Below, piece by piece: positions 9,363-38,274 of a stretch of DNA of 64,000 nt. The notes under the pieces are model-generated. The model worked only from the letters and a program-made list of their open reading frames with translations, ran no database searches and was not told the origin of the DNA. The DNA is taken from positions 6,820,001-6,884,000 of the forward strand of contig CATNEN010000007.1 of NCBI GenBank assembly GCA_950097015.1. The letters are read 5' to 3'. This stretch comes from Macrostomum hystrix. Taxonomy: Eukaryota; Animalia; Platyhelminthes. Both the position numbers and the translations under genes were made by a program. The first letter of the stretch is position 1. Each line of letters starts with the position of its first letter.

Positions 9363-9762
9363 GTTTGGAGTGCAACCCGCCAAGCATTGCAGTTTCAACC
9401 AAAAAACAATGGGGCTAGCAGTCTGTCTCGCATTGGTGAATTTTGTGCTCAAAGTCCCATGGTAGCCTCAGTCAAAGGACAGGTTTTACTGGGTCAGCTG
9501 TAGCGTAGCGACACTGAGGCGCCGAAAGTAACTGACAATGAGCGGCGTAAAGTGACCTTTATCCATGGCTACAGAGCAGCCTGATATCACGATAGCAGCT
9601 TGTTTACACGGCGAATGGAACTCAGACAATTGAAAGTCGAACGCATAAATTTCTTGACCGCCGATAAGAGAGTCATAGCCATAAAACTGACCCGATAAAA
9701 ACAGACTTTCAGTTTTATCAGTACTGAGTACAGAGCAGGTATGCAGAGAAATCACAGTCCGC

Positions 9763-12700
9763 TCAGATTGAGGCGGCATTCTTCTGATAAGTGTTCTGTA
9801 CTTTTTGTATTATCGGCCTAAAGAACCTGTTCTATAGGCCTTTCAGCTATTGAATGTGTTTTATTTCACGCAGCTAAATATCAAACCGCAAAAGTGTGAA
9901 GAATGCCACATATGGCACTCACCTTGCCCTCGAACTCAACGCTGGTGACACAGCAGGCGGTTCCGTCAATCATGACGTAGCGAATGTCCTCCAGCCGATG
10001 CCTGACCTGGTACTTGGCGACCGCGGCGTCATTGATGGCGATCTGAGCGAAGGGAGCGGCGGGGTGACAGCGGGGTGACATCCGCGGGAAGAGCTCTAAT
10101 TATAGTGAAACAGTGACAAAAAATGTCGGGGGAGATAGGGTTGTACTTCTGTAGGTGTGACTGGCTTTCCCGCCTAAGCTGAAAAGTGGAAGGGGAATGA
10201 TGGAAGCGAGAGAGGGCTGGTGGGAAAGTGGACTAACATAAGTGACTCACAATGTACTCTGTGTCTGTGGCTTGCAGTGCCACAGTTTCCACGTCGCGAG
10301 CAAGTCGCTGATCGAACCGGCTCGTCTCCTCGTCCCGGGCGACGCCGCGGCTGTCGGCCCAGGCGAATGAGGCGAAGCCCTGCGCCAGGTTGACCTCGCA
10401 CACCAGCGGCTTGAGGCCGGAGTCAGCGGGTCCGCAGCACAGTGCCAGGCTCAGCCTGCGGAGAGCGCGAGGGTCGTAGGCTCTGCTGCTCAAAATCCTT
10501 GAGCCTCAACATCCGCAGGCAACAGAGAGAATTCAAGAGATAACAGTTGAGTCAGATTGACAAGGGAGAGATAAGAGATACGTCAAGGGAAAGTGCTGGA
10601 TGGGCTTCGAGCGGATATTCGGGAGCACTTATCAGGCAGACGACTTCCCGACCCGTGTTCAAAGGATAAAAATGTTGAGCTTACTGATACTCGTAACATT
10701 AACAATGAGATGGCCCGTGTTTCTGAAACCTGCCCCAATTGGGCCAGATGTGCAGCAGACAACACAGCCGCAGCTATTGCGCGGCGCATCTCAAGAATCG
10801 AACACTCGACCTTCAAGTTGTGAGTCCGACGCCCTAACCACTAAGCTACAACCACTACCCGTGTTGCTACTCAAATATTTGTGATTCCGCGGTTTCCGCT
10901 CTCCCCTCTCCCTCCAATTTCGAAATCGTAGATCCGCCTCTGCCAGGGCGACTCACGTGGCGGGCCGCTTCGGATCGGGCTCGGCTGTCAGCCTGACGGT
11001 GACAAAGCGGGAGTCGCGCAGGCTGACGGGGAACTGGTTGAAGTAGGGCAGGCCAATCTGCTCCGGGAAGCTGGCCTCGTAGAAGATAGCCCCTCCGGAC
11101 AGCACCAGGTGGGTGAGGCGGTGCGGGTCGATCTGGTGCGGCAGGCTGACGCCGCCTTCTGTGCCGCCCAGCTGCACCTCGAAGCCGTTGAGCTTATAGA
11201 CGATGCCAATGTCGAACTGCTGCATGGCAGCTAGCGCGGGTCGGGCCAGGGTCACTGGGCGGCTCTGGCGGCCGCCGACGCAGCTGCTCAGGCTGACGGG
11301 ATTTCCCGGCTGGCAGCGGAGGCTGAAGCCGACGTCCGAATCAGCCGGGTCGCGGCCGCAGGCAAGCGTCACCTCACAGGCGGCGTCTTCGTCTGGCAGG
11401 CGGCCAGAGACGCGGACGCTGCGGCCAACCTGGAAGCCAGGCGGCAGCTGGCTGACCTTGGGCGCGCGCTGAGTGCAAAGTGGAGTGGATGGTGACTCAT
11501 GTTGGGATAATTGACAGTGTTTGACTTCTATATCTTCCCACTAGGGGGTCGGTGGCAGAGCGGTTAACGCGTTTGCCTCTCTACAAGGCACAGTGAAGTG
11601 TACACTGCCTGACGATGAGAAAGTCAGGGCAGATGTACACACCTGTGTGAGCGTGTGCCTGCGTACAGTATCTGTGTGCGTGTGTGCTCAGGAGTCAGCG
11701 AAATGGGCAGAATTGCCTCCTCGCTGGCTACGGGTCTAGTGTCACTAAATGATGTGCCATTGCCTGCAGCCCTCCTGCAATTATTATTATTATTACTAGA
11801 TATATCTTCCCACAATCTAAATTCCACATCCAGCCCAGCTCTCTCTGTAATCTTCAGCTTCAGTCACGCCTATCCCAAGCCACATCCAGCCCAGCTCTCT
11901 CTGTAATCTTCAGCTTCAGTCACGCCTATCCCAAGCCACATCCAGCCCAGCTCTCTCTGTAATCTTCAGCTTCAGTCACGCCTATCCCAAGCCACATCCA
12001 ATTTCCCCCCTCTTCTTAATTTCGGCACCTTCTCGCGCCATGACACGTCCTTCAGCTGGAAGTTGCCATCGATGTAGAAGTCTGTGATGTACTGCTTCTT
12101 GTTGGGCAGCTCGTAGGAGAGCACCGGCTTGCCGTCCAGTTGAACCTGAGGAGGTTTTGGTGGTCGTTTGTGCACAATTCGCGTCTTTTTGCCTCCTTCG
12201 ATGGAGCAGTTCCATCGTAGTTTAGAACTGACATATTTTAGAATAAATTCATCTTCGCTCATGAATCATGAAGATGATGACGCTCCAATGGCATCATACG
12301 AGCCCTCACCTGCACACAGGTGTGGTCCAGCTTGAGCAGGATGCTAGTCAGACTGGCCAGGCGGGGCAGTCGCTCCACTTTTGTGTCACACACAAAGCCG
12401 CCAGTCTCTGGTGCGGTGCGACCCACCGAGATGGCCTCGGCGGGGACGTCGATGACGCAGAGCATCGCCGCGCCTCGATCGAAGCCGAAGCTGATCTTGC
12501 TGGTTGGCGGCGACTTCAGCATCTGCAACTTGACTGCGATGGAGCTGACCAGCTCGAGCGAGTGCGGAAACTCCTCGCTGTATGGCAGCTCCAGCTCCTC
12601 CGGGAATTCCACACCCTGGTACTCGGTGTGACCGTCTAGGATCAGGTGAGTGAAGTTCGAGAAGGGCACCCGGTGGGGATGCACGCAGACTGCGTCCTTG

Positions 12701-15700
12701 AAGCTCACCTGCCGATTAAAAAAACAAGAAAATATTATATGAGTGCCTTTCGGTGCTAGAAGTCTAAGAGCTTACATTGAAGCCACTGGAAGTAGTCTGT
12801 ATCTCCAGCCTGAAGCTGCCTCCGCTGAATTGGCCAGTGACCGCCCGCTCCTCAGCTGTCCACCGGTTACCGGTGAACTGGCTGCACGACAGCACGGTGC
12901 CTGATGCATCTGGCTGTACCGAGATTTGCACGCGGAACTCCTCCTCACGGCCGGAGGGGCTGTTCGCATTCTTCAGGGACACGGTTGTACTGCGGGGGCG
13001 CAGGGGCGCATTACTGTAAGCTGTTTAGTGCCATGCAGAATGTAGCTGCGTCGAGCAGACAACGCTTATAACGCTTACTTACCAGTTTGTTTGGTCGCTC
13101 ATTTTGCCATAGACAATGATTCGCCGGCCGCTGCGCAATGATTCTGGCAGGTGCGCCTTGAATGGTACCGGCTGGAAAGGCACGAAGAGTGATTTTGTAA
13201 TTCGAAATAAAGCAGCTCAGCTTTCAGTGGCACTGAACCAAAATGTCTGGCTCGCGTTATTGGCTAAAGGAATTAGCGCACGCCATGATTAGGTGATACA
13301 GCAAGCGGGACTAAGACTATTCTTCATTATTCAACCGAATAATCAGTCCGACCATGTTTATTCATTAGACGTGCAGTGATTCGCCGATATCTACTTAAGC
13401 ATGTTGTTTCGTTACCCGTTTCTGAGCAGCCTTCTCATTTTTAACGGTGCGCCGCGACCACGATTTCTCTTCGGCTGCGGTTGTCGGCTCCTCCAAGCAG
13501 GAGTCCTCCGAGGAGCTGCCTTCCTCGCCACTCGAAGACGAATTAGCCGATCGAGCGCGGAAGAACGATGACTGACTGTCGCGCTGGCTTAGCAGGTTTT
13601 CCTGAACGGCGCGGCGGAAGCTGGCCAGTTCTGGCTCGCGAAGCCTGTGGTCGCTGGCGACACTCTCCGTCTCCATCTGGTCGCCCTCCTCTGGCGGTGG
13701 CGCCAGGATGAATTCGCCACAGTCACGAGGCTCTTGCTTCTGCTTCTGAAGCTGCTGCTTTTGCTGCTTTTGTTGTTGATTTTGCTGCTGCTGCTGCGGC
13801 TGCCGCCTCGGCTCTTGTATTGCCAGCTTAGGCGAAGATGCGACAGAGGCGCTGTCGGAGGCAGTGGAAGAAGCGGCGGTAGAAGCCGCTCCGCCGGAAA
13901 CTGACAGGTCGGACGTTGGTAGCTTCGGCAGAGACCTGAATCTGGCTCCGGCCCCAACCAGTGCGAGTCGCGGCGTTGACATTGGCGTTGAGTCAGCCGA
14001 GTTGCCGAATGATTCCTCGGACATCCAGCTGGCCGGACGATAGGTGCCCTTCAAGACGCTGCGTCCGTCGTGCGCTGCCTCTGCCTGCTCAAGGCTGTAG
14101 CTCTTGCTCCGACGAAACAAGCGCCAGAAGCCGCCGCTGCGGCCGCCGCTTTTGATCTTCTTTTCTTTGTGCTTCTTAGAACTCTTCTCCTTCGTCTGCT
14201 TCTGGTCTGGCCTCTGGGCCTGTGCTGCGTTCCGGACGACAATCCCGCGAAGTTGCACCGAGTGCTAAGTTAATTTTCGTCCGAAAACATGGTGAGTCAG
14301 TATAGAGTTAAACCACTAAAGAATTAGACAGTTGACTAACAACGCTACAATGTTAGTGTTTTTGTTAACTTCGCGCTCTATGCGAATTAAGATGTGACAG
14401 TTTTAGCACCGCAAAAATGCAAACTCAGAAAGTTAATGGAAAGTAAATAATTTCCTTGCTAAAAACATACTGGTTGTTATTACCGAACACTATGTTTGGA
14501 AATTTTCTATTTAATAAAAATAATCAACTTCATTTCCTGAATTTAAAACTCAGTATGGAGTTTTCAAATCTTATCGCTCACCTCTTCGTCGTCTTGATCC
14601 ATCTTCTGTGGCTCTTTTTCATCTTCATTCGTTTCCACTTGGCGAGTATGCGGCTGCGACTCGAGCACGGCGGAGGCCTGCTGCATCACCATCACTTCTT
14701 CGACATCCTCGTCCACCTCAGATTCCACGCCTTCGCGAGTGGCGTCAACGAAGTCAACCGACGTTGCTTGTAGCTCATCATCGTTGGCAGAAATTTCCAG
14801 CGTCAGGTCTAAGTCATCATCTGCATGCTCAGCGTTGGCGTGAAGCTCACCTGTCAAGCTCACTGTTTCGGACTTTTCGGACGCTTCAATATCTAGCTCC
14901 TGCTGTCCCGAGAGCTCGACATCTAGCTCCTGCTGTCCCGAGAGCTCGACATCTAGCTCATGCTGTCCTGAGAGCTCGACATCTAGCTCATGCTGTCCTG
15001 AGAGCTCGACATCTAGCTCCTGCTGTCCTGAGAGCTCGACATCTAGCTCCTGCTGTCCCGACAGCTCGACATCTAGCTCCTTTTGTCCTGAGAGCTCGAC
15101 ATCTAGCTCCTGCTGTCCTGAGAGCTCGACATCTAGCTCATGCTGTCCTGAGAGCTCGACATCTAGCTCCTGCTGTCCTGAGAGCTCGACATCTAGCTCC
15201 TGCTGTCCCGACAGCTCGACATCTAGCTCCTTTTGTCCTGAGAGCTCGACATCTAGCTCCTGCTGTCCTGAGAGCTCGACATCTAGCTCCTGCTGTCCTG
15301 AGAGCTCGACATCTAGCTCCTGCTGTCCTGACAGCTCCACATCTAGCTCCTGCTGATCAGGGAGCTCGACATCTAGCTCCTTTTGTCCTGAGACATCCAC
15401 ATCTAGCTGTCTAGGAAGTTGAAAGTCTCCTGTGGTTGCTTTAATGTTGATGTCCACATCTGGGTGCGGGAATCGGACCTCGTTGACTTGCAACTCCAAA
15501 TCGTGTGATTCTAGAACAATCAGGAAAGGCAAATATGGAGTCAATTGACTTATGATGATAACTTTTTCTAAACACTGAAACACTTTTACAGTCTCGTTCC
15601 GAATTGCAGAAAAATAAAATGGATGTTTGTAACGTGCGCCCCTATGCCTGATATAAAGTGAAGCGGTACGTCATGCGGAAAGGTAATCGCTGATTATGAC

Positions 15701-18700
15701 TCTAGTTCTGAATTGCAAAACCCAAAACAAATACAATATTCTGACGCAATCATGTGCGATTCTAAACCACGATCCGATTAGGGTCCAACTATATCTACAA
15801 ATTTGTAGTAAAATATATCCTATTAATTCTAAAAGCTACAATAATTCTCTATCACATTAATCTAGAAAAGTATACTGTGCAAAAACTTTCCAGTAATCAG
15901 CTGAGAAGTGCAAAACTTACGCAAATCGTGGCTTCCACCGGTAATTTCCAAGCCAGCCTTGCCCACTGGCATCGACGGATTCAAATCAAGGCTCAAATTG
16001 ATGTCGGGCGCTTGCGCATCAATCACCACCATACCGCCAGCACCGATTCCAGTTTCCGACTTTGATCCTCTGTCTGGATCCTTGCCGTCCGAACCAGGAA
16101 TGGAAGACTTCCGACGAAAACTCGATCCCGACACGCCAGGCTCCTCGTGATTTCTCATATCGTATGAACCGCGATGACTACGATCGAATACAGACTCAAC
16201 TTTCCGCCCGATATTCGAAAAAGAATCTAACAGACCACGAATTGGAGATTTCGACCGCCTCAAAGAAGCACGATTAGACCCAGAAACTGAACCAGAGAGA
16301 CTACCATCAAGAGAAGATCCGTTACGATCAACATCAACAGATAATGATCCACGCAAATCCACATCCGAAACATCATTATCTACATTCATCGACATAGAAG
16401 GAATTTCAACTTCCACGTCTGGCTTCTTCAGTTTTAGATCGGCATCTAGGTCGACGTCGAGATGTGGAGCCTTCACGTCAATGTCAATGTCCGGCTTCTT
16501 CACGTCGATATCAACATGCGGAGCGTCGATGTCAATGTCCACGTCGGGGCCCTTGACTTTGGGACCCTTCAGTCCGAAGCTGGGCATCTTGAAGTGCGGT
16601 CCCTTGATCTTCGGACCCTTCACGTCAATGTCCACGTCTGGCTTCTTCAGTTTTAGATCGGCATCTAGGTCGACGTCGAGATGTGGAGCCTTCACGTCAA
16701 TGTCAATGTCCGGCTTCTTCACGTCGATATCAACATGCGGAGCGTCGATGTCAATGTCCACGTCGGGACCCTTGACTTTGGGACCCTTCAGTCCGAAGCT
16801 GGGCATCTTGAAGTGCGGTCCCTTGATCTTCGGACCCTTCACGTCAATGTCCACGTCTGGCTTCTTCAGTTTTAGATCGGCATCTAGGTCGACGTCGAGA
16901 TGTGGAGCCTTCACGTCGATATCAGCATGCGGAGCGTCGATGTCAATGTCCACGTCGGGACCCTTGACTTTGGGACCCTTCAGTCCGAAGCTGGGCATCT
17001 TGAAGTGCGGTCCCTTGATCTTCGGACCCTTCACGTCAATGTCCACGTCTGGCTTCTTCAGTTTTAGATCGGCATCTAGGTCGACGTCGAGATGTGGAGC
17101 CTTCACGTCGATATCAGCATGCGGAGCGTCGATGTCAATGTCCACGTCGGGACCCTTGACTTTGGGACCCTTCAGTCCGAAGCTGGGCATCTTGAAGTGC
17201 GGTCCCTTGATCTTCGGACCCTTCACGTCAATGTCCACGTCTGGCTTCTTCAGTTTTAGATCGGCATCTAGGTCGACGTCGAGATGTGGAGCCTTCACGT
17301 CAATGTCAATGTCCGGCTTCTTCACGTCGATATCAACATGCGGAGCGTCGATGTCAATGTCCACGTCGGGACCCTTGACTTTGGGACCCTTCAGTCCGAA
17401 GCTGGGCATCTTGAAGTGCGGTCCCTTGATCTTCGGACCCTTCACGTCAATGTCCACGTCTGGCTTCTTCAGTTTTAGATCGGCATCTAGGTCGACGTCG
17501 AGATGTGGAGCCTTCACGTCAATGTCAATGTCCGGCTTCTTCAAGTCGATATCAACATGCGGAGCGTCGATGTCAATGTCCACGTCGGGACCCTTGACTT
17601 TGGGACCCTTCAGTCCGAAGCTGGGCATCTTGAAGTGCGGTCCCTTGATCTTCGGACCCTTCACGTCAATGTCCACGTCTGGCTTCTTCAGTTTTAGATC
17701 GGCATCTAGGTCGACGTCGAGATGTGGAGCCTTCACGTCAATGTCAATGTCCGGCTTCTTCACGTCGATATCAACATGCGGAGCGTCGATGTCAATGTCC
17801 ACGTCGGGACCCTTGACTTTGGGACCCTTCAGTCCGAAGCTGGGCATCTTGAAGTGCGGTCCCTTGATCTTCGGACCCTTCACGTCAATGTCCACGTCTG
17901 GCTTCTTCAGTTTTAGATCGGCATCTAGGTCGACGTCGAGATGTGGAGCCTTCACGTCAATGTCAATGTCCGGCTTCTTCAAGTCGATATCAACATGCGG
18001 AGCGTCGATGTCAATGTCCACGTCGGGACCCTTGACTTTGGGACCCTTCAGTCCGAAGCTGGGCATCTTGAAGTGCGGTCCCTTGATCTTCGGACCCTTC
18101 ACGTCAATGTCCACGTCTGGCTTCTTCAGTTTTAGATCGGCATCTAGGTCGACGTCGAGATGTGGAGCCTTCACGTCAATGTCAATGTCCGGCTTCTTCA
18201 CGTCGATATCAACATGCGGAGCGTCGATGTCAATGTCCACGTCGGGACCCTTGACTTTGGGACCCTTCAGTCCGAAGCTGGGCATCTTGAAGTGCGGTCC
18301 CTTGATCTTCGGACCCTTCACGTCAATGTCCACGTCTGGCTTCTTCAGTTTTAGATCGGCATCTAGGTCGACGTCGAGATGTGGAGCCTTCACGTCAATG
18401 TCAATGTCCGGCTTCTTCACGTCGATATCAACATGCGGAGCGTCGATGTCAATGTCCACGTCGGGACCCTTGACTTTGGGACCCTTCAGTCCGAAGCTGG
18501 GCATCTTGAAGTGCGGTCCCTTGATCTTCGGACCCTTCACGTCAATGTCCACGTCTGGCTCCTTCAGTTTTAAATCGGCATCTAGGTCGACGTCGAGATG
18601 TGGAGCCTTCACGTCGATATCAGCATGCGGAGCGTCGATGTCAATGTCCACGTCGGGACCCTTGACTTTGGGACCCTTCAGTCCGAAGCTGGGCATCTTG

Positions 18701-27700: not shown

Positions 27701-30700
27701 TCACGTCAATGTCAATGTCCGGCTTCTTCACGTCGATATCAACATGCGGAGCGTCGATGTCAATGTCCACGTCGGGACCCTTGACTTTGGGACCCTTCAG
27801 TCCGAAGCTGGGCATCTTGAAGTGCGGTCCCTTGATCTTCGGACCCTTCACGTCAATGTCCACGTCTGGCTTCTTCAGTTTTAGATCGGCATCTAGGTCG
27901 ACGTCGAGATGTGGAGCCTTCACGTCAATGTCAATGTCCGGCTTCTTCACGTCGATATCAACATGCGGAGCGTCGATGTCAATGTCCACGTCGGGGACCC
28001 TTGACTTTGGGACCCTTCAGTCCGAAGCTGGGCATCTTGAAGTGCGGTCCCTTGATCTTCGGACCCTTCACGTCAATGTCCACGTCTGGCTTCTTCAGTT
28101 TTAGATCGGCATCTAGGTCGACGTCGAGATGTGGAGCCTTCACGTCAATGTCAATGTCCGGCTTCTTCACGTCGATATCAACATGCGGAGCGTCGATGTC
28201 AATGTCCACGTCGGGGCCCTTGACTTTGGGACCCTTCAGTCCGAAGCTGGGCATCTTGAAGTGCGGTCCCTTGATCTTCGGACCCTTCACGTCAATGTCC
28301 ACGTCTGGCTTCTTCAGTTTTAGATCGGCATCTAGGTCGACGTCGAGATGTGGAGCCTTCACGTCAATGTCAATGTCCGGCTTCTTCACGTCGATATCAA
28401 CATGCGGAGCGTCGATGTCAATGTCCACGTCGGGACCCTTGACTTTGGGACCCTTCAGTCCGAAGCTGGGCATCTTGAAGTGCGGTCCCTTGATCTTCGG
28501 ACCCTTCACGTCAATGTCCACGTCTGGCTTCTTCAGTTTTAGATCGGCATCTAGGTCGACGTCGAGATGTGGAGCCTTCACGTCAATGTCAATGTCCGGC
28601 TTCTTCACGTCGATATCAACATGCGGAGCGTCGATGTCAATGTCCACGTCGGGACCCTTGACTTTGGGACCCTTCAGTCCGAAGCTGGGCATCTTGAAGT
28701 GCGGTCCCTTGATCTTCGGACCCTTCACGTCAATGTCCACGTCTGGCTTCTTCAGTTTTAGATCGGCATCTAGGTCGACGTCGAGATGTGGAGCCTTCAC
28801 GTCAATGTCAATGTCCGGCTTCTTCACGTCGATATCAACATGCGGAGCGTCGATGTCAATGTCCACGTCGGGACCCTTGACTTTGGGACCCTTCAGTCCG
28901 AAGCTGGGCATCTTGAAGTGCGGTCCCTTGATCTTCGGACCCTTCACGTCAATGTCCACGTCTGGCTTCTTCAGTTTTAGATCGGCATCTAGGTCGACGT
29001 CGAGATGTGGAGCCTTCACGTCGATATCAGCATGCGGAGCGTCGATGTCAATGTCCACGTCGGGACCCTTGACTTTGGGACCCTTCAGTCCGAAGCTGGG
29101 CATCTTGAAGTGCGGTCCCTTGATCTTCGGACCCTTCACGTCAATGTCCACGTCTGGCTTCTTCAGTTTTTAGATCGGCATCTAGGTCGACGTCGAGATG
29201 TGGAGCCTTCACGTCAATGTCAATGTCCGGCTTCTTCACGTCGATATCAACATGCGGAGCGTCGATGTCAATGTCCACGTCGGGGCCCTTGACTTTGGGA
29301 CCCTTCAGTCCGAAGCTGGGCATCTTGAAGTGCGGTCCCTTGATCTTCGGACCCTTCACGTCAATGTCCACGTCTGGCTTCTTCAGTTTTAGATCGGCAT
29401 CTAGGTCGACGTCGAGATGTGGAGCCTTCACGTCAATGTCAATGTCCGGCTTCTTCACGTCGATATCAACATGCGGAGCGTCGATGTCAATGTCCACGTC
29501 GGGACCCTTGACTTTGGGACCCTTCAGTCCGAAGCTGGGCATCTTGAAGTGCGGTCCCTTGATCTTCGGACCCTTCACGTCAATGTCCACGTCTGGCTTC
29601 TTCAGTTTTAGATCGGCATCTAGGTCGACGTCGAGATGTGGAGCCTTCACGTCAATGTCAATGTCCGGCTTCTTCACGTCGATATCAACATGCGGAGCGT
29701 CGATGTCAATGTCCACGTCGGGGACCCTTGACTTTGGGACCCTTCAGTCCGAAGCTGGGCATCTTGAAGTGCGGTCCCTTGATCTTCGGACCCTTCACGT
29801 CAATGTCCACGTCTGGCTTCTTCAGTTTTAGATCGGCATCTAGGTCGACGTCGAGATGTGGAGCCTTCACGTCAATGTCAATGTCCGGCTTCTTCACGTC
29901 GATATCAACATGCGGAGCGTCGATGTCAATGTCCACGTCGGGGCCCTTGACTTTGGGACCCTTCAGTCCGAAGCTGGGCATCTTGAAGTGCGGTCCCTTG
30001 ATCTTCGGACCCTTCACGTCAATGTCCACGTCTGGCTTCTTCAGTTTTAGATCGGCATCTAGGTCGACGTCGAGATGTGGAGCCTTCACGTCGATATCAG
30101 CATGCGGAGCGTCGATGTCAATGTCCACGTCGGGACCCTTGACTTTGGGACCCTTCAGTCCGAAGCTGGGCATCTTGAAGTGCGGTCCCTTGATCTTCGG
30201 ACCCTTCACGTCAATGTCCACGTCTGGCTTCTTCAGTTTTAGATCGGCATCTAGGTCGACGTCGAGATGTGGAGCCTTCACGTCAATGTCAATGTCCGGC
30301 TTCTTCACGTCGATATCAACATGCGGAGCGTCGATGTCAATGTCCACGTCGGGGCCCTTGACTTTGGGACCCTTCAGTCCGAAGCTGGGCATCTTGAAGT
30401 GCGGTCCCTTGATCTTCGGACCCTTCACGTCAATGTCCACGTCTGGCTTCTTCAGTTTTAGATCGGCATCTAGGTCGACGTCGAGATGTGGAGCCTTCAC
30501 GTCAATGTCAATGTCCGGCTTCTTCACGTCGATATCAACATGCGGAGCGTCGATGTCAATGTCCACGTCGGCGACCCTTGACTTTGGGACCCTTCAGTCC
30601 GAAGCTGGGCATCTTGAAGTGCGGTCCCTTGATCTTCGGACCCTTCACGTCAATGTCCACGTCTGGCTTCTTCAGTTTTAGATCGGCATCTAGGTCGACG

Positions 30701-33700
30701 TCGAGATGTGGAGCCTTCACGTCAATGTCAATGTCCGGCTTCTTCACGTCGATATCAACATGCGGAGCGTCGATGTCAATGTCCACGTCGGGACCCTTGA
30801 CTTTGGGACCCTTCAGTCCGAAGCTGGGCATCTTGAAGTGCGGTCCCTTGATCTTCGGACCCTTCACGTCAATGTCCACGTCTGGCTTCTTCAGTTTTAG
30901 ATCGGCATCTAGGTCGACGTCGAGATGTGGAGCCTTCACGTCAATGTCAATGTCCGGCTTCTTCACGTCGATATCAACATGCGGAGCGTCGATGTCAATG
31001 TCCACGTCGGGACCCTTGACTTTGGGACCCTTCAGTCCGAAGCTGGGCATCTTGAAGTGCGGTCCCTTGATCTTCGGACCCTTCACGTCAATGTCCACGT
31101 CTGGCTTCTTCAGTTTTAGATCGGCATCTAGGTCGACGTCGAGATGTGGAGCCTTCACGTCAATGTCAATGTCCGGCTTCTTCACGTCGATATCAACATG
31201 CGGAGCGTCGATGTCAATGTCCACGTCGGGACCCTTGACTTTGGGACCCTTCAGTCCGAAGCTGGGCATCTTGAAGTGCGGTCCCTTGATCTTCGGACCC
31301 TTCACGTCAATGTCCACGTCTGGCTTCTTCAGTTTTAGATCGGCATCTAGGTCGACGTCGAGATGTGGAGCCTTCACGTCAATGTCAATGTCCGGCTTCT
31401 TCAAGTCGATATCAACATGCGGAGCGTCGATGTCAATGTCCACGTCGGGGCCCTTGACTTTGGGACCCTTCAGTCCGAAGCTGGGCGATCTTGAAGTGCG
31501 GTCCCTTGATCTTCGGACCCTTCACGTCAATGTCCACGTCTGGCTTCTTCAGTTTTAGATCGGCATCTAGGTCGACGTCGAGATGTGGAGCCTTCACGTC
31601 AATGTCAATGTCCGGCTTCTTCACGTCGATATCAACATGCGGAGCGTCGATGTCAATGTCCACGTCGGGACCCTTGACTTTGGGACCCTTCAGTCCGAAG
31701 CTGGGCATCTTGAAGTGCGGTCCCTTGATCTTCGGACCCTTCACGTCAATGTCCACGTCTGGCTTCTTCAGTTTTAGATCGGCATCTAGGTCGACGTCGA
31801 GATGTGGAGCCTTCACGTCAATGTCAATGTCCGGCTTCTTCACGTCGATATCAACATGCGGAGCGTCGATGTCAATGTCCACGTCGGGACCCTTGACTTT
31901 GGGACCCTTCAGTCCGAAGCTGGGCATCTTGAAGTGCGGTCCCTTGATCTTCGGACCCTTCACGTCAATGTCCACGTCTGGCTTCTTCAGTTTTAGATCG
32001 GCATCTAGGTCGACGTCGAGATGTGGAGCCTTCACGTCGATATCAACATGCGGAGCGTCGATGTCAATGTCCACGTCGGGACCCTTGACTTTGGGACCCT
32101 TCAGTCCGAAGCTGGGCATCTTGAAGTGCGGTCCCTTTATCTTCGGACCCTTCACGTCAATGTCCACGTCTGGCTTCTTCAGTTTTAGATCGGCATCTAG
32201 GTCGACGTCGAGATGTGGAGCCTTCACGTCGATATCAACATGCGGAGCGTCGATGTCAATGTCCACGTCGGGACCCTTGACTTTGGGACCCTTCAGTCCG
32301 AAGCTGGGCATCTTGAAGTGCGGTCCCTTGATCTTCGGACCCTTCACGTCAATGTCCACGTCTGGCTTCTTCAGTTTTAGATCGGCATCTAGGTCGACGT
32401 CGAGATGTGGAGCCTTCACGTCAATGTCAATGTCCGGCTTCTTCACGTCGATATCAACATGCGGAGCGTCGATGTCAATGTCCACGTCGGGGCCCTTGAC
32501 TTTTGGACCCTTCGGTCCGAAGCTGGGCATCTTGAAGTGCGGTCCCTTGATCTTCGGACCCTTCACGTCAATGTCCACGTCTGGCTTCTTCAGTTTTAGT
32601 TCGGCATCTAACTGAACGTCAATATTTGTTCTATACTGTGTGTCTTTTGGGAACTGTTCGTCTGCTGCTGAAGCTTGTGAAATTATTTTTGATTCTTTTT
32701 TGTCTCTAATTTTGTCGCCATTGTTGTGTTCTTTTGAATCGGTGTGGTCTTCTCTCTTTGTTTTTATATTCCAGGGGATTTTTAGTCCAGATTCCAATTC
32801 GATCGCCTTCTTTGGCAAAATTGCTTCTGGAAGATTTTAGTAGCAGTTATTGGTGCAGTTTTCATTATGAAGTATGTGCGAGTAGTGCTCTTGTACTGCT
32901 TACATGCTTTTAGTAGCCAGTTAGTAGCTGCCAGTTTTCATTTGTTTTATTCCTACGCTAGTACCTATTGCTAGTGTACTTACCTGTTTCTACTTCCACT
33001 TGAAGGTCTAGCGGCTCCGAAATCGCGGGATTAATGGAGACATCACCGTGGTCGGTGTCCGAGGACTCATCGATATCCTCAATGTCAAGAAATTCCACAG
33101 AAGTGAACTCCGCTTCTCCATCCAGCATGAGCATGTGAATCAAGCCGTGGAGGCTGTCGTGTTCTATTGAAGATAATACTTCATCGTTAAGGCGCACCTG
33201 AATTTAATAAGAAATGGTAAACGTAAGAACAGTTTGGACTAATTAGGAGACGCGAGTTTTAGGAGACAGACTAAAATTTAGTTACTGATAGAACGAACAT
33301 TGAGTTACATGCGACCATCTACTTATGGCTTTGGAACTTCTTACGAAATATTTAAAATTTGAGAAAATGTATTTGCTACAAAGTTTACTAGTAAAGTAAA
33401 GCTACGAGTTTACCTCGTAATATTCGTCCTCGACCAGAATTTGCACTGTAAAGTTGCTGCTGGTGCGAAACTCGCCCTTACACTTGCCCATCTTCACCCG
33501 ATCGCTATTTCCGGGATCTGGTTGAGAATAGAGCTCAAAGTGACCGCCTCTGTTGATGCTGACCCGCAGGGGAACCTGCCGCTCCGGACTACCACTGGGC
33601 TGCTTGCAGGCCAGCTCCAGCACCACTCTGTAGGTTGTAACAATAATTTTTCTGTTCGTTAAGAATACAAAAATCAAAAATTATTTTGTACCTGAATCTC

Positions 33701-36700
33701 TAAGCTATCGAACCACTGTCTAAAGATTTTGTGTCATGTAGTTTTCCTCTTCAGAGTTATCAGTGTTGAATAGGGCACTGCTCGCTTGGATAGATGAGTG
33801 GCATGAGTGGCACTCACCGGTGTCCAGTTAAGATTCCTTTGATCTCGACGCAGTCTCCCGCAATCAGGCCGTCAGGAATGTCGTATGTGAACTGCGTGCC
33901 CTGCGGAAAATATGCATGCAGGGCGCATTCAAACAAAGCATCAGCAAGTTCTTTGGACATCAAGAAAATCAGCAAGCAGATCGATTGGGTCACACAAAAA
34001 TTCTGACGAATACCTTCAGCAAGTCTTACTGATTGCTACTTTTATGCTACCTGGTTCTGTAAAAACTGCGTCGTCTGAAAGGTGGACTTGCTATGCATTC
34101 TAGCTTTTTGTTCTCTTTCTAAGTCTGCCTATTTCAGTCTTCTCCAGCGGTTCTTTCTCAAACACTCGCCCAGACTGGGTGACAAGTGCTTGCATTTGTT
34201 TTTTCTGTTTTCCATATATGTGGTTGCATTGAATAGCCCACTGTGGGTCATCTACGAGCTCAGGATTTTGTCTCTTGAGGTATGCGCTCGGATATTTTAA
34301 CAAATTTGCTCAACTGCGAAATACCAATTTTGTCGGATGGCCCGAAGGACAAAAATAACTTTCCTCCGCTTCGGTGCAAACCTCGGCGAAGGCCTTTCAG
34401 CCCAGTGAATGCCCCGACCGCAGTGAATGCGCGGCAAATGCAACCTTGGCATTGGTAGATTCTACGGCGGTACTATAGCTCAGCTGATACCTGTACGCCG
34501 TATGCAAATCAAACCTCAGCTAATACAAACCTTAGACCTGTGCACACCTGACTTCTTTTTCTTATTTTGTTTTTGCGACGAAAAAACAAACTTCACATTA
34601 ATTCTTGCTAACTCGATATAAAGGTAATGGACATAAGTCGCCTAGGTGGGTACTTCAGTTTTGTATCGAATCGCGCTCTCGAGGGGGAACGAATGTGGGT
34701 GTTAATGCACAAGGAATGCCATTAAATCATACTAAAGTGAGCCGTCCAACCAAGGCTAGCATTTTGCAATCATCAGCTTTGAAAAGTATTTTTAATCGAG
34801 GCAAAAGCGGAGGCTTGATAGTACTTCGCTTCTGTGTTGTCTCTTTCAACGAATTGTTAGTCTGAGTCAAAGAGACAAGGACCAGTCGAAACCGACGTAA
34901 AATTTCCTATTGTTCAGTTTGAATCGACTGTCCATCTCGAAGTTTAAATTCGGCAGAAAAATGCTAACAATCGCATTAATTGCGTTAAACTAAAATTGCG
35001 TTAATTATCTTCTCATTTTAACGTGGAAATGTCGCATTTTTTATTTCACCTTTCTCCACAGGCAGTACTTGACACTTGGAGTTACACCGGCATCGTCCGA
35101 TAGGGACGCCGAATCGGCTGATCGTTTCGTTGAGGCGAGCTTCAGCATAGCAGGCTGACTGGGTGATGTAGGGCCTGCTTCCAGCCTCCAAGCATCTGCG
35201 ACTGCAAGACTGCTATATCTCTCACACGCTTGGACTTTCCAACTGTCTATTGTCACTTTCTGGGCTGCAGAATCGGACCAACACGCTACAGTGCGCTGGG
35301 TGTTTCGCTGGCTTAGAAAAGAATGTTGTTTTTATGCGGCGCCAGAAGGAGGTGGGGAGCCGGCTCGCCCAGCCACCGCAGGTGCTGTTCTCTCCCCTTA
35401 CCTACTGCAACCCTCTCGCCGCTCCGTCGAGCTCCACCCTGCCTTCACTTCTCCCAGACCGTGTACTCCGGTCCGATAGCGCCAGGGCTCTCTCTCGCTC
35501 TCGTGGACTATTCGAGCGCAAACAAGCTCGAAGCGCACGCGCTCGGAGGGAGTGAGGTTGGCCTCACTGCAGTTGCGGCTGCTAGACAAATCTGTCCTTG
35601 GCTTTTTTGAAGGAAATTCAAACCGCGCCAGGCGCAGAGAGAATGGGGCAGAGAAGAAAATCTCTGAGCAAAAAACGTCAAGTTTTATTTTCTTGTTCTC
35701 ATTTTTGTTCGCATCTTCTGGCAGCATTCCATTCGCATTTTGTTTGGCCCCACCTCAAAGGAGTCCGAAAGCAGAGGGCTTAAGTGTTGTAGCTATTCGT
35801 AGATTCAGGCTTTGAGTTCTATCTATTGTCTTTCGCCCACCGTAGCTCTCTATTGTTCTCTGGATTACACTTCAAAACCATCGCGTGGGCTCGGCCCCTC
35901 GCCTCCAGCCGCCCGGGACCAGCGAGTGGAAAGCGACAATCAGCAACCCTGAGCGCATATATTTGTGTTTTATCACAAATTCCAGTCATTCCTCCCTTAG
36001 CCAAGCAGAAGAGTCCTTTGCCAAGTCTTCGGCCGTCCTTTTAGTGGCCCCTTCTCAGCTTGCTAAATCTTGTTAAGCTGGACTGACAAAGAAGAGGCTT
36101 GGTGAGTGGAGAATGCACTCACAATGCCAGTGAGTAGTTTATGGCTCTAGCCTATGCGACAGTCCTCAAAGCACGTGTTGGTTAAATTTAAGGCAGCTCT
36201 GAATTAGTTCATTCATTGAGCTCAATGTGCATGGTCTCAAATGCTGCATTCACGTCTCCAGTTATCAACTGGTGTCTTCGGAGAGACCGCCCCACTCCTA
36301 ACTTTCGCCTCGCCTCTGCCTTTGCTGGCGCTTTCTCTGAATGCTCTCTACCTGCTTTTTGCTTCCCATCCGGTACTCACCTGCTGTCTACCCGCTACCT
36401 ACCTGCTGTCTACCCGCTAACTACTTGCTGTCTACCCGCTACCTACCTGCGGTCTACCTGCTACCTACCTGCTGTCTACCTACCTGCTGTTTACCCGCTA
36501 CCTACCTGCTGTCTACCCGCTACCTACCTGCTGTCTACGCGCTACCTACCTGCTGTCTACGCGCTACCTACCTGCTGTCTACCCGCTACCTACCTGCTGT
36601 CTACGCGCTACCTACCTGCTGTCTACGCGCTACCTACCTGCGGTCTACCCGCTACCTACCTGCTGTCTACGCGCTACCTACCTGCGGTCTACCCGCTACC

Positions 36701-37301
36701 TACCTGCTGTCTACCCGCTACCTACCTGCTACCTACCCGCTACCTACCTGCTCTCAAGCTAAGCCTTCATCGACTCTCTACTAAATTGCTTTCTTCCTAC
36801 TAATTTTATTGCCTCCACATTCAAGTGCTTTACCCTTTGTTTTACTTTTCTCTGTTTTCGTTCAGTATTTTTCGCAAGCCGTCCCATTAGATTAAAAAAC
36901 TAATGAGATCGCCGCCGAGTTTATCAAATGAAGCCTCGAGAAAATGCAAGGTGATGGCTTTCTAGGTAAGAACAATTTCACATCTACGAGGATTTCATTC
37001 AACGCTTAGTAAAGAACAGCCTTCCAGTATAGCTTTTCCGGGCAAACAGGTAAAGCAAGCAGAAATGTAGCCCTTGAGAAAATACAAGAACGCATTCGCA
37101 CGCTGTTCGCTAGCTTAGGAAAGTGAAACCTGACACTTGGTCTGCGGTGCGCTCTGAAACTGCGCCTTCCACCTGCATGCGCTCTACAGCCCCCCATCTG
37201 AGCTGAAATCTCGTACAGCTGAAAGCTAGGTAATAGCGGTCGCTTACCTTGAGTCGCTCGTGATAGTCTGCGGGCAGCCATACGTCGCCGGTTGCGGCCA
37301 T
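9763..37301 (-). CDS. Giant (~7,000 aa) multi-galectin-fold / AHNAK-like-repeat protein; exons (5'->3'): 37301-37248 (or alternative 35148-35050), 33900-33818, 33627-33414, 33197-32984, 32826-15921, 15510-14582, 14264-13416, 13171-13083, 12989-12776, 12708-12310, 12145-12029, 11468-10957, 10455-10251, 10042-9923, 9783-9763
   Basis: Every junction from 33900 to 9763 is GT-AG and phase-consistent by hand (0,2,0,1,1,0,0,2,0,0,0,2,0,0). After correcting a net +7 nt of single-base indels in the repeat exon, the CDS is a multiple of 3. The first exon is uncertain. Confidence 0.72.
9923..13171 (-). CDS. C-terminal block of four tandem galectin-like (GLECT-fold) domains of the giant protein (7 exons)
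   Basis: Domain starts PVPFKAHLPESLRSGRRIIVYG, LELPYSEEFPHSL, APKVSQLPPGFQVGRSVRVSG and IGLPYFNQFPVSL. Internal features include GNRWTAEER, FRLEIQTTSSGFNVSF, HPHRVP..FTHLILDG, VQLDGKPVLSY..FYIDGNFQLKDVSW and IAINDAAVAKY..IRYVMIDG..VTSVEF, which follow the galectin beta-sandwich pattern. Confidence 0.75.
10560..10860 (-). mobile_element. tRNA-derived SINE (head ~10785-10855) in an intron
   Basis: The reverse strand reads GTTGTAGCTTAGTGGTTAGGGCGTCGGACTCACAACTTGAAGGTCGAGTGTTCGATTCTT, i.e. A box, anticodon-like loop and B box (GTTCGATTC), followed by non-tRNA body. The 3' boundary is approximate. Confidence 0.6.
11542..11800 (+). mobile_element. tRNA-derived SINE with (ATT)n tail and 13-bp TSD; internally deleted copy
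   Basis: A-box GGTGGCAGAGCGG; body similar to 48094-48411 (AAGGCACAGTGAA...GTGTGTGCTCAGGAGTC...); tail ATTATTATT; TSD TATATCTTCCCAC at 11529-11541 and 11801-11813. Confidence 0.85.
11824..12000. repeat. 57-bp tandem repeat, ~3 copies (intronic)
   Basis: CCACATCCAGCCCAGCTCTCTCTGTAATCTTCAGCTTCAGTCACGCCTATCCCAAG repeated. Confidence 0.9.
14890..15410 (-). repeat. Coding 30-bp tandem repeat (ELDVELSGQQ)n, ~17 copies, in exon 15510-14582
   Basis: Open in the spliced frame; no frameshifts. Confidence 0.9.
15921..32826 (-). CDS. Single ~16.9-kb exon encoding ~75 AHNAK/periaxin-like repeats (73-aa unit, ~10 64-aa variants)
   Basis: Unit DVDIDIDAPHVDIDVKKPDIDIDVKAPHLDVDLDADLKLKKPDVDIDVKGPKIKGPHFKMPSFGLKGPKVKGP. 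Unique in-frame flanks on both sides. Acceptor ttccag|AA at 32826 and donor C|gtaagt at 15921. Nine single-base indels lie between 24487 and 31487. Confidence 0.85.
16413..32610. repeat. 219-bp (192-bp variant) coding tandem array, ~75 units
   Basis: Periodicity visible directly and in the ORF track (starts every 219 nt). Confidence 0.98.
32984..33900 (-). CDS. N-terminal galectin-like domain of the giant protein (3 exons)
   Basis: TQFTYDIPDGLIAGDCVEIKG...VVLEL...VPLRVSI...GEFRTSSNFTVQILVEDEYYEVRLNDEVLSSIEH...IHMLMLDGEAEFTSVEF. Exon sizes and phases 83(0-2)/214(2-0) mirror 89(0-2)/214(2-0) of the first C-terminal domain. Confidence 0.75.
36380..36750. repeat. Minisatellite, ~23-bp unit (CCTGCTGTCTACCCGCTACCTA)
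   Basis: Tandem copies read directly. Confidence 0.92.
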
Positions 37302-37465: not shown

Positions 37466-38274
37466 TGTTTCAGGCCAGTTTTTAGGGCCTAGCCGCAAAT
37501 TCTATAAGTAGGCGGTTTCTTACTTTATACTCTCTATCTGCAATGCCGGGCGCATTCTATCCGTCCTATCCAGTTTTGTGAGGCTTGCCTCAGTGCGCAT
37601 CACCGCCCCATTGTTCCAAGCCAGAAAGTTTGCATCTATTCGCGGCGAACAAACCCGCAGCGGAGGCTGGCTAGCGATGGGTGAGCTGGACTGCTCAGCA
37701 GCTGTACTCAAGCTGCAGAAAGCATGTCTGTTGAGCAGCAGAAAGTGACCAACGATTGGCAGACTGAACAATGAGCTCGGTGGCCTGGCTGCTCAGTGAA
37801 GTTGCTACTGCAGGTGGGTTGGCATAGCCATAGCTCAAAGGTGCTGTCAGCTAGAATAGCCTTCTTGCCTTCTTGCATGACATCACTTCCAGTGCAACCA
37901 AGAAGCCACATTATAAATTGTCTTTCCCTGCTCCTGGCTATCCCTGCCTCCTAAGCCCTCTATTCTTTTGCCGCCGTGTGGGCGTATCTGAGCAGATGGC
38001 GCCAGTTCACTTCTCAACCCTTCTGCGCCCGGTCAACCTTTCTCGCGTTATTGAATTCCAGTTTGCAAAAAATGCTGACCCATGCTGTCGAAGCCAAACC
38101 GTATAGCTATCCATTCTTGTCGGTCTTTCATGCTTCAAACTAAAAAAAGTTGTTCGTTTCTATGAAGCCCGACATGAAGCTCTGATACCTTAAATACGGA
38201 ATTCTCACACTCAGCTCTCTTCCAATTCTCTATCTCGTTATGTCTTTGATTCTTTGATCTCTATCCTCTCACTG

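What the first reader, a model, noticed from the sequence alone, without database searches (positions are those of the whole stretch)
9763..37301. Giant ~7,000-aa protein: galectin-fold domain, ~75 AHNAK-like repeats, then four more galectin-fold domains
Seen: a phase-consistent 15-exon model joins one N-terminal galectin-like domain, a 16.9-kb exon of 73-aa repeats, an acidic 10-aa repeat, a K/S/Q-rich linker and four tandem galectin-like domains. No signal peptide or TM segment is evident. Known: the repeat contains motifs typical of AHNAK/AHNAK2/periaxin (KGPKVKG, FKMPSFG, VDIDAP). Those proteins are described from vertebrates and carry an N-terminal PDZ domain, not galectin domains. Galectins usually have 1-2 CRDs, occasionally 4 in invertebrates. 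Inference: this is a cytoskeletal or membrane scaffold, a long spacer with lectin-fold heads at both ends. It could be an invertebrate AHNAK relative with swapped terminal domains, or a convergent repeat. I am not aware of this architecture having been described.
Basis: partly seen in the sequence, partly recalled or inferred. Interest (0 to 1): 0.9.

Follow-up and report, generated by a model that had tools for sequence, protein, structure and literature searches.

The report
Giant flatworm protein: galectin heads, AHNAK-like rod
A Macrostomum flatworm gene that is transcribed and spliced encodes a protein of about 7,000 residues, with galectin-shaped domains at both ends of a very long rod of about 75 near-identical repeats whose closest matches among the proteins searched (those of comparable length) were vertebrate AHNAK proteins; its function is unknown.

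Summary
On the minus strand there is a 219-bp (73-aa) array of about 75 units, an exon of 10-aa acidic repeats, a K/S/Q-rich linker exon and four tandem galectin-fold domains. RNA contigs confirm nine splice junctions from the array's tail to the stop at 9881-9883.

Corrections:
- The 16.9-kb exon is not one open frame in this assembly. Nine single-base indels break it; I think they are probably assembly errors.
- The linker exon is a cassette exon and is mostly skipped.
- I count 14 coding exons, not 15.
- The four 5' junctions and the start codon have no RNA support.

The repeats match vertebrate AHNAK, AHNAK2 and periaxin strongly. However, the match lies in short proline-ended blocks, not in the order of blocks within a unit. 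There is no PDZ domain and no AHNAK-type C-terminus.

The genome holds two paralogues with the same layout (one head, a spacer, four heads) but unrelated spacers. This scan had already flagged both on other DNA. M. lignano has fragmentary public models named "Galectin domain-containing protein".

Most likely this is a family of spacer-and-heads proteins in which one member recently expanded an AHNAK-type repeat. Whether that repeat arose by shared descent or by convergence is unresolved.

The parts
37248..37301 (-). Putative first coding exon (ATG at 37301, 18 codons, donor GTAAGC, phase 0). Unverified.
   Evidence: Sequence only. Not detectably conserved in the two paralogues. No RNA evidence.
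33818..33900 (-). N-terminal galectin-like domain, exon b (first strands, motif IPDGL..GD.VE.KG)
   Evidence: 86% identical to the chromosome-1 paralogue. An acceptor lies directly in front of it in all three paralogues, with upstream stops in two of them. Weak match to galectin HMM positions 6-24.
33414..33627 (-). N-terminal galectin-like domain, exon c
   Evidence: Canonical AG/GT sites and consistent phase. Conserved in the paralogues. Weak match to HMM positions 76-99 (hhalign P 0.0013).
32984..33197 (-). N-terminal galectin-like domain, exon d (last strands) plus an acidic tail
   Evidence: 55% identical to the paralogue. Profile-profile match to the last 37 columns of the galectin family profile: 94.7%, E 6e-8. 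Donor GTAAGT at 32983.
15921..32826 (-). Giant exon (16,906 nt): about 70 unique residues, about 75 AHNAK-like units, about 163 unique tail residues. Broken by nine single-base indels in this assembly.
   Evidence: The 3' donor at 15921 is RNA-confirmed.
16412..32610 (-). Tandem array of 219-bp (73-aa) and 192-bp (64-aa) units, 96-99% identical
   Evidence: Hits vertebrate AHNAK, AHNAK2 and PRX.
24490..31487 (-). The part of the array that holds all nine frame-shifting indels. Five are the same CCC-to-CCCC change. This is where units are otherwise identical.
14582..15510 (-). Acidic exon with 17 copies of a 10-aa repeat (ELDVELSGQQ-like). Its start also carries AHNAK-like DVDV.SG.K motifs.
   Evidence: Both junctions are RNA-confirmed.
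13416..14264 (-). K/S/Q-rich linker exon (283 codons, phase 0/0); a cassette exon that is mostly skipped
   Evidence: Joints 14582^14264, 13416^13171 and the skipping joint 14582^13171.
12308..13171 (-). Galectin-fold domain C1 (exons 13171-13083, 12989-12774 and the start of 12706-12308) and most of domain C2
   Evidence: RNA joints. Orthologue P0121: Pfam PF00337 E 2.6e-28, best stretch 267-394; PDB galectins E 2e-12.
12029..12143 (-). End of domain C2
   Evidence: RNA joints. In the AF2 model of the orthologue, C2 (405-536) is an 11-strand beta-sandwich with pLDDT 73-91. Its family HMM score is only 1.9 bits.
10956..11468 (-). Galectin-fold domain C3 and the start of C4
   Evidence: 86% identical to P0121 538-708. 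VIA Z 19.1, rmsd 1.9-2.1 A over 131-134 residues to galectin-7.
9881..10454 (-). Rest of domain C4 (exons 10454-10251 and 10042-9884) and the stop codon at 9881-9883
   Evidence: RNA joints. Frame check. Tandem galectins 8 and Tl-gal align over model residues 537-814. Family HMM 43 bits.

Best explanation
What it is: one expressed, spliced gene on the minus strand of a Macrostomum flatworm. It encodes a protein of about 7,000 residues with no transmembrane segment. Its parts, in order:
- a degenerate galectin-like domain spread over three exons;
- one 16.9-kb exon with about 75 near-identical 73-aa (some 64-aa) units rich in K, D, P, V and I;
- a 10-aa acidic repeat;
- an optional K/S/Q-rich linker;
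- four tandem galectin-fold domains, arranged as two pairs of the tandem-repeat type.

Family context: it is one of three paralogues in this genome that share the layout of one head, a spacer and four heads. Their central exons are unrelated: the AHNAK-like array here, acidic repeats of about 4,500 aa on contig C31, and about 1,250 disordered residues on contig C1. The AHNAK-like array is therefore a young expansion, specific to this lineage, inside a spacer exon that evolves freely.

How it probably works (inferred, not shown): the heads are beta-sandwich binding modules. At least the first C-terminal head (C1), the only one checked, has lost part of the canonical sugar-binding set. The repeat region is a long polyampholyte made of short beta-prone blocks that end in proline. 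It would hold the two sets of heads far apart, so the protein would act as a tether or cross-linker in the cytoplasm or at the cell cortex. Skipping the linker exon would alter the spacer between the repeat region and the four C-terminal heads.

Resemblance to AHNAK: it lies in a shared vocabulary of short blocks (FKMPSFG, LKGPKVKGP, DVDIDVKGP). I lean slightly (about 55:40) towards parallel evolution of the same physical solution rather than descent from an AHNAK-type ancestor.

The nine frameshifts are most likely assembly errors (about 75%).
For: Gene structure, shown:
- Nine constitutive junctions and one alternative junction are seen in RNA-derived contigs.
- All exons are open and in phase down to the stop codon.

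Galectin fold, shown on the orthologue P0121 (79-93% identical to the window's exons):
- Pfam PF00337 E 2.6e-28; PDB galectins E 2e-12 for C1 and 3e-3 for C3.
- The AF2 model has four beta-sandwiches of 10-11 strands each.
- Foldseek matches tandem galectins at E 1e-13.
- VIA Z 19 for C3, and C3+C4 align to galectin-8.

N-terminal domain:
- It is collinear in all three paralogues.
- Its last exon matches the end of the galectin profile (94.7%).

Paralogues with other spacers. The M. lignano model PAA47915.1 joins part of the N-terminal domain, the spacer and the four heads in one protein.

AHNAK likeness:
- The top 120 hits are all vertebrate AHNAK, AHNAK2 or PRX.
- One unit scores 66.6 bits; residue shuffles score 24 +/- 3.
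- Exact 7-mers are shared, FKMPSFG 99 times and PKVKGPD 86 times; the longest exact shared stretch is 12 residues.
- The block-shuffle control scores 58.5 +/- 4.2 bits (maximum 69.7) and the reversed unit 42 bits.

The repeat occurs only at this locus in the genome.

Frameshifts:
- All nine lie in the 5' half of the array, where units are otherwise identical.
- Seven are changes in the length of a single-base run, five of them the same CCC-to-CCCC change beside a T/C variant site.
- The downstream exons are conserved with M. lignano and are expressed.
Against: - No RNA evidence links the N-terminal exons or the ATG to the giant exon.
- The N-terminal domain's fold was not modelled, because spliced models could not be joined for the tools.
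- If the nine indels are real, the protein stops after about six units and the gene is decaying. Recurrence of one identical +1 unit could also reflect spread by unequal crossing-over.
- Against convergence: a stretch with 17 of 19 residues identical to a fish AHNAK-like protein (KMPSFGLKGPKV.GPDVD), and hits to no family other than AHNAK, are hard to reach by chance.
- The function is entirely inferred. Nothing shows the location in the cell or any binding partner.
- A signal peptide on an undetected first exon cannot be excluded.
Confidence: 0.65

Rival explanations
1. It is a true relative of AHNAK. On this reading the repeat module descends from the same ancestral module as the central repeat units of vertebrate AHNAK, AHNAK2 and periaxin. 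Its flanking PDZ and C-terminal domains were replaced by galectin-fold heads, or the repeat was captured by a galectin-head gene.
For: - In a search of 5.8 billion proteins, restricted to candidates of 0.55-1.75 times the query length, the listed hits are only AHNAK-family proteins, at 28-41% identity over 500 residues.
- The ESM Atlas's nearest clusters are AHNAK.
- One unit is 44-50% identical to lamprey and salamander repeats.
- Exact 7- to 12-mers are shared, and 17 of 19 residues are identical across KMPSFGLKGPKV.GPDVD.
- The gene has the same structure, a giant exon flanked by small ones (PMC10682155).
- The neighbouring acidic exon also carries DVDV.SG.K-like motifs and is shared with M. 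lignano.
- Transcriptome studies have given AHNAK or AHNAK2 labels to oyster and earthworm genes (PMC8945556, PMC7253469).
Against: - There is no PDZ domain anywhere in the window (best tblastn E 1.0), and no match to AHNAK C-termini outside their repeats.
- Block order carries almost no extra score.
- The two paralogues have unrelated spacers, so the repeat is not ancestral to the family.
- None of the 120 best hits is from an invertebrate.
Confidence: 0.35
2. The gene is a transcribed pseudogene, or one that is decaying. On this reading the nine frameshifts are real, and translation from the N-terminal domain stops after about six repeat units.
For: - The assembly shows eight +1 and one -1 indels.
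- One identical +1 unit recurs five times, as a real variant spread by unequal crossing-over would.
Against: - All indels lie where units are otherwise identical and reads are hardest to place. None lies in the more varied 3' half, which is 8.6 kb of intact frame.
- Seven of the nine are changes in the length of a single-base run.
- Downstream exons stay open, are 79-93% identical in protein to M. lignano, and are spliced and expressed.
Confidence: 0.17
3. The N-terminal galectin-like exons are not part of this protein. On this reading the giant protein starts at or near the giant exon and has lectin-fold heads at its C-terminal end only.
For: - None of the four 5' junctions has RNA support.
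- Two protein searches with unique parts of the giant exon, one at its 5' start and one in its 3' tail, found nothing.
- The proposed first exon is not conserved in the paralogues.
Against: - The splice sites are canonical and the phases fit.
- The same three exons lie directly upstream of the giant exon in all three paralogues.
- A public M. lignano model joins them to the spacer and the four C-terminal heads for one paralogue.
Confidence: 0.1
4. The repeat exon came from a vertebrate by horizontal transfer, or is contamination in the assembly.
For: All of the best matches are vertebrate proteins.
Against: - RNA contigs splice the exon's tail to flatworm-specific exons.
- Identity to vertebrate proteins is only 30-50%.
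- The locus lies inside a multi-megabase contig.
Confidence: 0.03

Closest known systems
AHNAK / AHNAK2 / periaxin (vertebrate giant scaffold proteins)
   Same: - The repeats are built from the same short proline-ended blocks rich in K, D and V: FKMPSFG, KGPKVKGP, DVD.D.KGP.
- The repeats sit in one giant exon of about 17 kb flanked by small exons (PMC10682155).
- The size is similar, about 6,000-7,000 residues.
   Different: - There is no N-terminal PDZ domain and no AHNAK-type C-terminal domain.
- The unit is 73 aa, against 128 aa in AHNAK and 165 aa in AHNAK2 (PMC10682155).
- The units are 96-100% identical to each other.
- The order of blocks is not specifically shared.
- Both ends are galectin-fold domains.
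Tandem-repeat galectins (galectin-8, galectin-9, Toxascaris leonina galectin)
   Same: - The C-terminal block looks like two pairs of the tandem-repeat type.
- Foldseek gives E 1e-13 over about 285 columns, and VIA aligns C3+C4 to galectin-8 and Tl-gal.
- Domain C1 passes Pfam PF00337.
   Different: - There are five domains in one chain, with about 6,200 residues inserted between the first and the second.
- The canonical sugar-binding set is incomplete: in C1 the histidine position is Q and, in this species, the arginine position is Q, while W, E and R are kept (alignment, exon translation).
- Domain C2 is not recognisable by sequence.
The two paralogues in this genome (contig C1 near 11.50-11.51 Mb; contig C31 near 1.896-1.917 Mb) and their M. 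lignano models (PAA47915.1, A0A1I8J927; the orthologue of this gene is A0A1I8GPB3)
   Same: - The layout is the same: a three-exon N-terminal domain, a giant central exon and four C-terminal domains.
- C-terminal exons are 30-76% identical.
   Different: The central exons are unrelated: disordered K/S/Q-rich sequence in one and E/D/L-rich acidic repeats in the other. Only this member has AHNAK-like units.

Membership tests
AHNAK family (AHNAK, AHNAK2, PRX) | N-terminal PDZ domain (PMC10682155, PMC7072810) | tested here: not met
   tblastn of the first 200 residues of ten PDZ-bearing AHNAK hits against the whole window gave a best E of 1.0. The N-terminal exons are galectin-like.
AHNAK family (AHNAK, AHNAK2, PRX) | Central repeat units built of short K/D/E/V-rich blocks that end in proline | tested here: met
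   The top 120 hits are all from this family. One unit scores 66.6 bits against 24 +/- 3 for residue shuffles. Exact 7- to 12-mers are shared.
AHNAK family (AHNAK, AHNAK2, PRX) | Unit-level collinearity with AHNAK repeat units, that is, homology of the unit and not only of its blocks | tested here: inconclusive
   Block-shuffled units score 58.5 +/- 4.2 bits (maximum 69.7) against 66.6 for the real unit; the reversed unit scores 42.
AHNAK family (AHNAK, AHNAK2, PRX) | Repeats encoded in one giant exon flanked by small exons (PMC10682155) | tested here: met
   The exon at 32826-15921 is 16,906 nt. Its 3' junction is RNA-confirmed.
AHNAK family (AHNAK, AHNAK2, PRX) | Non-repetitive C-terminal domain of about 1,000 residues with regulatory and partner-binding sites | tested here: not met
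   tblastn with the last 500 residues of six AHNAK hits matched only the repeat array. The C-terminus here is an acidic repeat, a linker and four galectin-fold domains.
Galectins (Pfam PF00337, Gal-bind_lectin) | Beta-sandwich domain of about 130 residues that matches the family profile or fold | tested here: met
   Tested on the orthologue P0121, which is 79-93% identical to the window's exons. Pfam E 2.6e-28, 98.6 bits against a cut-off of 22.1. VIA Z 19.1 to galectin-7 for C3, and C3+C4 align to galectin-8. C2 is supported only by the AF2 topology. The window's own exon fragments give only E 0.006 and 0.025.
Galectins (Pfam PF00337, Gal-bind_lectin) | Canonical carbohydrate-binding residues (H, N, R ... 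N ... W, E, R) | tested here: not met
   In the C1 alignment to the Toxascaris galectin the histidine position is Q. W, E and R are kept. The arginine position is R in M. lignano but Q in this window. The other domains were not examined residue by residue.
Galectins (Pfam PF00337, Gal-bind_lectin) | The N-terminal domain is also a galectin fold | tested here: inconclusive
   The three exons match galectin HMM positions 6-24, 76-99 and 97-131 in order, at 3-9 bits each. hhalign gives 94.7% for the last exon and 18% for the middle one. The fold could not be modelled, because exons may not be joined for the tools.
Macrostomum proteins with one head, a spacer and four heads (a family defined by this scan) | Three-exon N-terminal domain, giant central exon, four C-terminal galectin-like domains, all collinear | tested here: met
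   The window's exons match the paralogues on C1 and C31 in the same order. M. lignano model PAA47915.1.

The most novel reading that the evidence does not exclude
AHNAK-type repeats are not a vertebrate invention. On this reading, the flatworm protein carries a true descendant of the same repeat module, attached to lectin-fold heads instead of a PDZ domain. It would be the first RNA-supported AHNAK-repeat protein outside vertebrates. It would also show that the repeat rod is a portable module that can serve different end domains.
Probability: 0.35. Interest if true: 0.75.

Novelty: new variant of a known kind. Interest (0 to 1): 0.55.

Why it matters
AHNAK proteins are giant scaffolds studied in vertebrates, and what their repeat rod does physically is poorly understood. 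Here a rod built from the same blocks sits between quite different end domains, in an animal where RNA interference and in situ hybridisation are routine (Macrostomum lignano has the orthologue). That gives an independent system for asking what the rod does.

The three paralogues keep identical heads but have unrelated spacers. They form a natural experiment on whether only the length and charge of the spacer matter.

If the repeat proves to be homologous, the origin of the AHNAK repeat moves back to the bilaterian ancestor. If it is convergent, it is a striking case of a 19-residue motif evolving twice.

The case also shows how a young, near-identical array 16 kb long defeats both assembly and gene annotation. 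Public M. lignano models of this gene are 825-residue fragments.

Tried and rejected
- Pfam on the ORF fragments of the window gave only sub-threshold galectin hits (E 0.006 and 0.025), because the domains are split by introns.
- Pfam on the repeats gave only spurious low-complexity hits such as DUF6470 and Sarcoglycan_1. It has no AHNAK-repeat family.
- Two protein searches with unique parts of the giant exon found nothing: residues 1-85 of the 5' end and the 169-residue tail. So there are no transcript-derived proteins that would link the N-terminal domain to the array or show the array in M. lignano.
- An AF2 model of six repeat units without an alignment had mean pLDDT 46. It showed short strands throughout but is too uncertain to use.
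- Rfam and tRNA scans of the highly covered intron element found nothing.
- The bacterial promoter scan is irrelevant for this eukaryotic gene.
- Literature searches found no paper on AHNAK-like proteins in flatworms and none pairing AHNAK-like repeats with galectin domains. They found only unexamined AHNAK labels in oyster and earthworm transcriptome studies.
- Contamination was rejected, because RNA contigs splice the giant exon to flatworm-specific exons.
- The joined spliced protein was not built or sent to any tool. All searches were done exon by exon or on database proteins.

Full report
**Where and what.** The window is a piece of a 220-Mb flatworm genome, contig C7. Earlier notes of this scan name the genus Macrostomum. 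The closest database proteins are from Macrostomum lignano, at 79-93% identity in the C-terminal exons. This is therefore a related Macrostomum species. The gene lies on the minus strand.

**The repeat array.** Tandem Repeats Finder reports a 219-bp period over about 16412-32610 with 96-99% matches. Anchoring on one conserved 24-mer gives 74 anchors. The units are 54 of 219 bp, 10 of 192 bp, seven of 220 bp, one of 218 bp and one double unit of 439 bp, about 75 units in all. Only 15 different unit sequences occur, and one of them makes up about half of the array. Each unit encodes 73 residues: 16 D, 13 K, 9 P, 8 V and 7 I, with net charge -3 and a proline mostly every 9 residues. The repeat occurs nowhere else in the genome. 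Other matches are below 35% identity and have E of 3e-8 or worse.

**The giant exon is not one open frame here.** Frame analysis shows nine frame changes, caused by eight one-base insertions and one one-base deletion, at about 31487, 30572, 29723, 29171, 27996, 26462, 25113, 24929 and 24490.
- Five are the same CCC-to-CCCC change, at a site where other units carry a T/C variant.
- One lengthens an A run and one shortens a TT.
- All nine lie in the 5' half of the array, where long runs of units are otherwise identical.
- The more varied 3' half is an intact frame of 2,882 codons.
- The net +7 bases account exactly for the difference between the frame set by the 5' acceptor and the frame set by the RNA-confirmed 3' donor.

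I read these indels as assembly or consensus errors in a near-perfect array (about 75%). The sequence alone cannot settle it.

**RNA evidence.** Four runs from one study hold about half of the sampled words of 9800-14800. When their contigs are laid on 10000-15999 they prove to be spliced.
- The joints, all GT..AG on the minus strand, are 15921^15510, 14582^14264, 13416^13171, 13083^12989, 12774^12706, 12308^12143, 12029^11468, 10956^10454 and 10251^10042.
- There is also an exon-skipping joint, 14582^13171. It removes the 849-nt linker exon, keeps the frame, and has higher contig depth than the including joints.
- With these junctions every exon is open and in phase, from the giant exon's tail to a stop at 9881-9883.
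- No single contig crosses the 10-aa acidic repeat. Continuity there rests on the genomic ORF.

**C-terminal heads.** The window's own ORF fragments give only sub-threshold galectin hits, because introns split the domains. An exhaustive HMMER search with the 171-residue exon 11468-10956 found 41 proteins. The best is an 825-residue M. lignano fragment, P0121 (UniProt A0A1I8GPB3, 'Galectin domain-containing protein'). It reproduces the RNA-supported exon chain from the acidic repeat to the C-terminus. That joined step was left out.
- Pfam PF00337 matches P0121 at E 2.6e-28.
- PDB galectins match domain C1 at E 2e-12 and domain C3 at E 3e-3.
- A family HMM scores C1 at 89 bits, C3 at 65, C4 at 43 and C2 at only 1.9.
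- The AF2 model has four all-beta domains of 10-11 strands each (266-399, 405-536, 540-670, 677-815) with pLDDT about 60-90. Residues 1-262 are disordered.
- Foldseek's best matches are tandem-repeat galectins at E about 1e-13.
- VIA-align gives Z 19.1 and rmsd 1.9-2.1 A over 131-134 residues between C3 and galectin-7, and aligns C3+C4 to galectin-8.
- In C1 the canonical histidine is Q and, in this species, the arginine is Q, while W, E and R remain. Ordinary beta-galactoside binding is therefore doubtful.

**N-terminal head.** Three exons (33900-33818, 33627-33414, 33197-32984) have canonical splice sites and mutually consistent phases. The last one feeds the giant exon in the frame of the repeat peptide.
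- The exons are conserved in both paralogues.
- In all three genes the first of them starts at an acceptor, with in-frame stops upstream in two of the genes. An upstream ATG exon must therefore exist.
- Each exon, taken alone, matches a galectin family HMM at positions 6-24, 76-99 and 97-131, in order, at 3-9 bits.
- In a profile-profile comparison the last exon matches the end of the galectin profile at 94.7% (E 6e-8); the middle exon reaches only 18%.
- The domain is probably galectin-like, but its fold was not modelled.

**A family with interchangeable spacers.** Searching the genome with the C3 exon finds two paralogues.
- On contig C1 the same N-terminal exons, a 605-codon K/S/Q-rich exon, further disordered exons and the four C-terminal domains follow each other.
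- On contig C31 the N-terminal exons are followed by a 13.5-kb exon of E/D/L-rich repeats and then the C-terminal domains.
- This scan had already flagged both on other DNA, as notes s1-847636 and s1-278223.
- M. lignano model PAA47915.1 joins part of the N-terminal domain, the spacer and the four heads in one predicted protein.

The layout of one head, a spacer and four heads is thus conserved, the spacer is free to change, and the AHNAK-like array is specific to this member.

**How AHNAK-like is it?**
- A search with 500 residues of repeats gave 766 hits. The 120 listed are all vertebrate AHNAK, AHNAK2 or periaxin, from lamprey to primates, at 25-41% identity. The ESM Atlas agrees.
- A single unit scores 66.6 bits (44-50% identity) against lamprey and salamander proteins. 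Residue shuffles score 24 +/- 3.
- Exact 7-mers are shared many times: FKMPSFG 99 times and PKVKGPD 86 times. The longest exact shared stretch is 12 residues, within a stretch with 17 of 19 residues identical.
- However, shuffling the proline-ended blocks of the unit still gives 58.5 +/- 4.2 bits (maximum 69.7), and the reversed unit gives 42 bits. What is shared is a vocabulary of short blocks, not a unit architecture.
- There is no PDZ domain and no AHNAK C-terminus in the window. These are defining parts of AHNAK proteins (PMC10682155, PMC7072810).
- I found no paper on such proteins in flatworms. AHNAK labels appear without analysis in oyster and earthworm transcriptome studies.

Descent and convergence both remain possible. 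I put descent at about 0.35-0.4.

**Function.** Nothing here tests it. The protein has no transmembrane-like segment and, with the proposed start, no signal peptide. My best inference is a long tether or cross-linker in the cytoplasm or at the cell cortex. Five beta-sandwich heads would bind proteins or unusual glycans, and the polyampholyte repeat region would set the distance between the single N-terminal head and the four C-terminal ones. An AF2 model of six units was too uncertain to use.

**Verdict.** The architecture is real for the C-terminal two-thirds of the gene and probable for the N-terminal head. It is a new variant built from known parts. This scan has already seen the family on other DNA in the same genome. 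Public databases annotate it only as fragments.

Noticed in passing
window 11543-11800 (intron between exons 12029 and 11468): A short stretch with very high summed RNA-contig depth (up to about 13,800 against about 40 for the exons), many contigs and many loose ends. It is probably an expressed dispersed repeat. Rfam and tRNA scans found nothing.
   Followed up: partly
window 11824-12000: A perfect 56-bp tandem repeat, 3.2 copies at 100% identity, in the same intron.
   Followed up: no
window 9000-9378: A 29-bp tandem repeat (13 copies, 96% identity) just downstream of the stop codon. One RNA contig runs about 765 nt beyond 10251, so this repeat may lie at the end of the 3' UTR.
   Followed up: no
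window 38270 to about 39650: A long array of a 65-bp satellite at 99% identity with strong C-over-G skew (GC skew -0.51 in 38001-40000), upstream of the gene.
   Followed up: no
window 36379-36752: A 22-bp tandem repeat (17 copies) inside the proposed 3.3-kb first intron.
   Followed up: no
window 1534-4404: About 2.9 kb of satellite that is open in several frames on both strands (ORFs of 890-956 codons), an artefact of the repeat. It lies between ORFs of what looks like a caspase gene; the caspase active-site motif QACRG is in ORF 5921-6403 on the plus strand.
   Followed up: no
window 46578-47669 (minus strand): Two adjacent ORFs that look like a mariner/Tc1-type transposase split by a frameshift.
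   Followed up: no
window 53909-54598 (minus strand); also L023 4753-5799: A fragment resembling a PIF1/Helitron-type helicase C-terminus. A similar ORF lies beside the paralogue on contig C31.
   Followed up: no
proteins P0122-P0136: The databases hold proteins with 8-17 tandem galectin domains, for example 12 and 15 Pfam stretches in P0122 and P0128. That is far more than the 1-4 usually quoted.
   Followed up: partly
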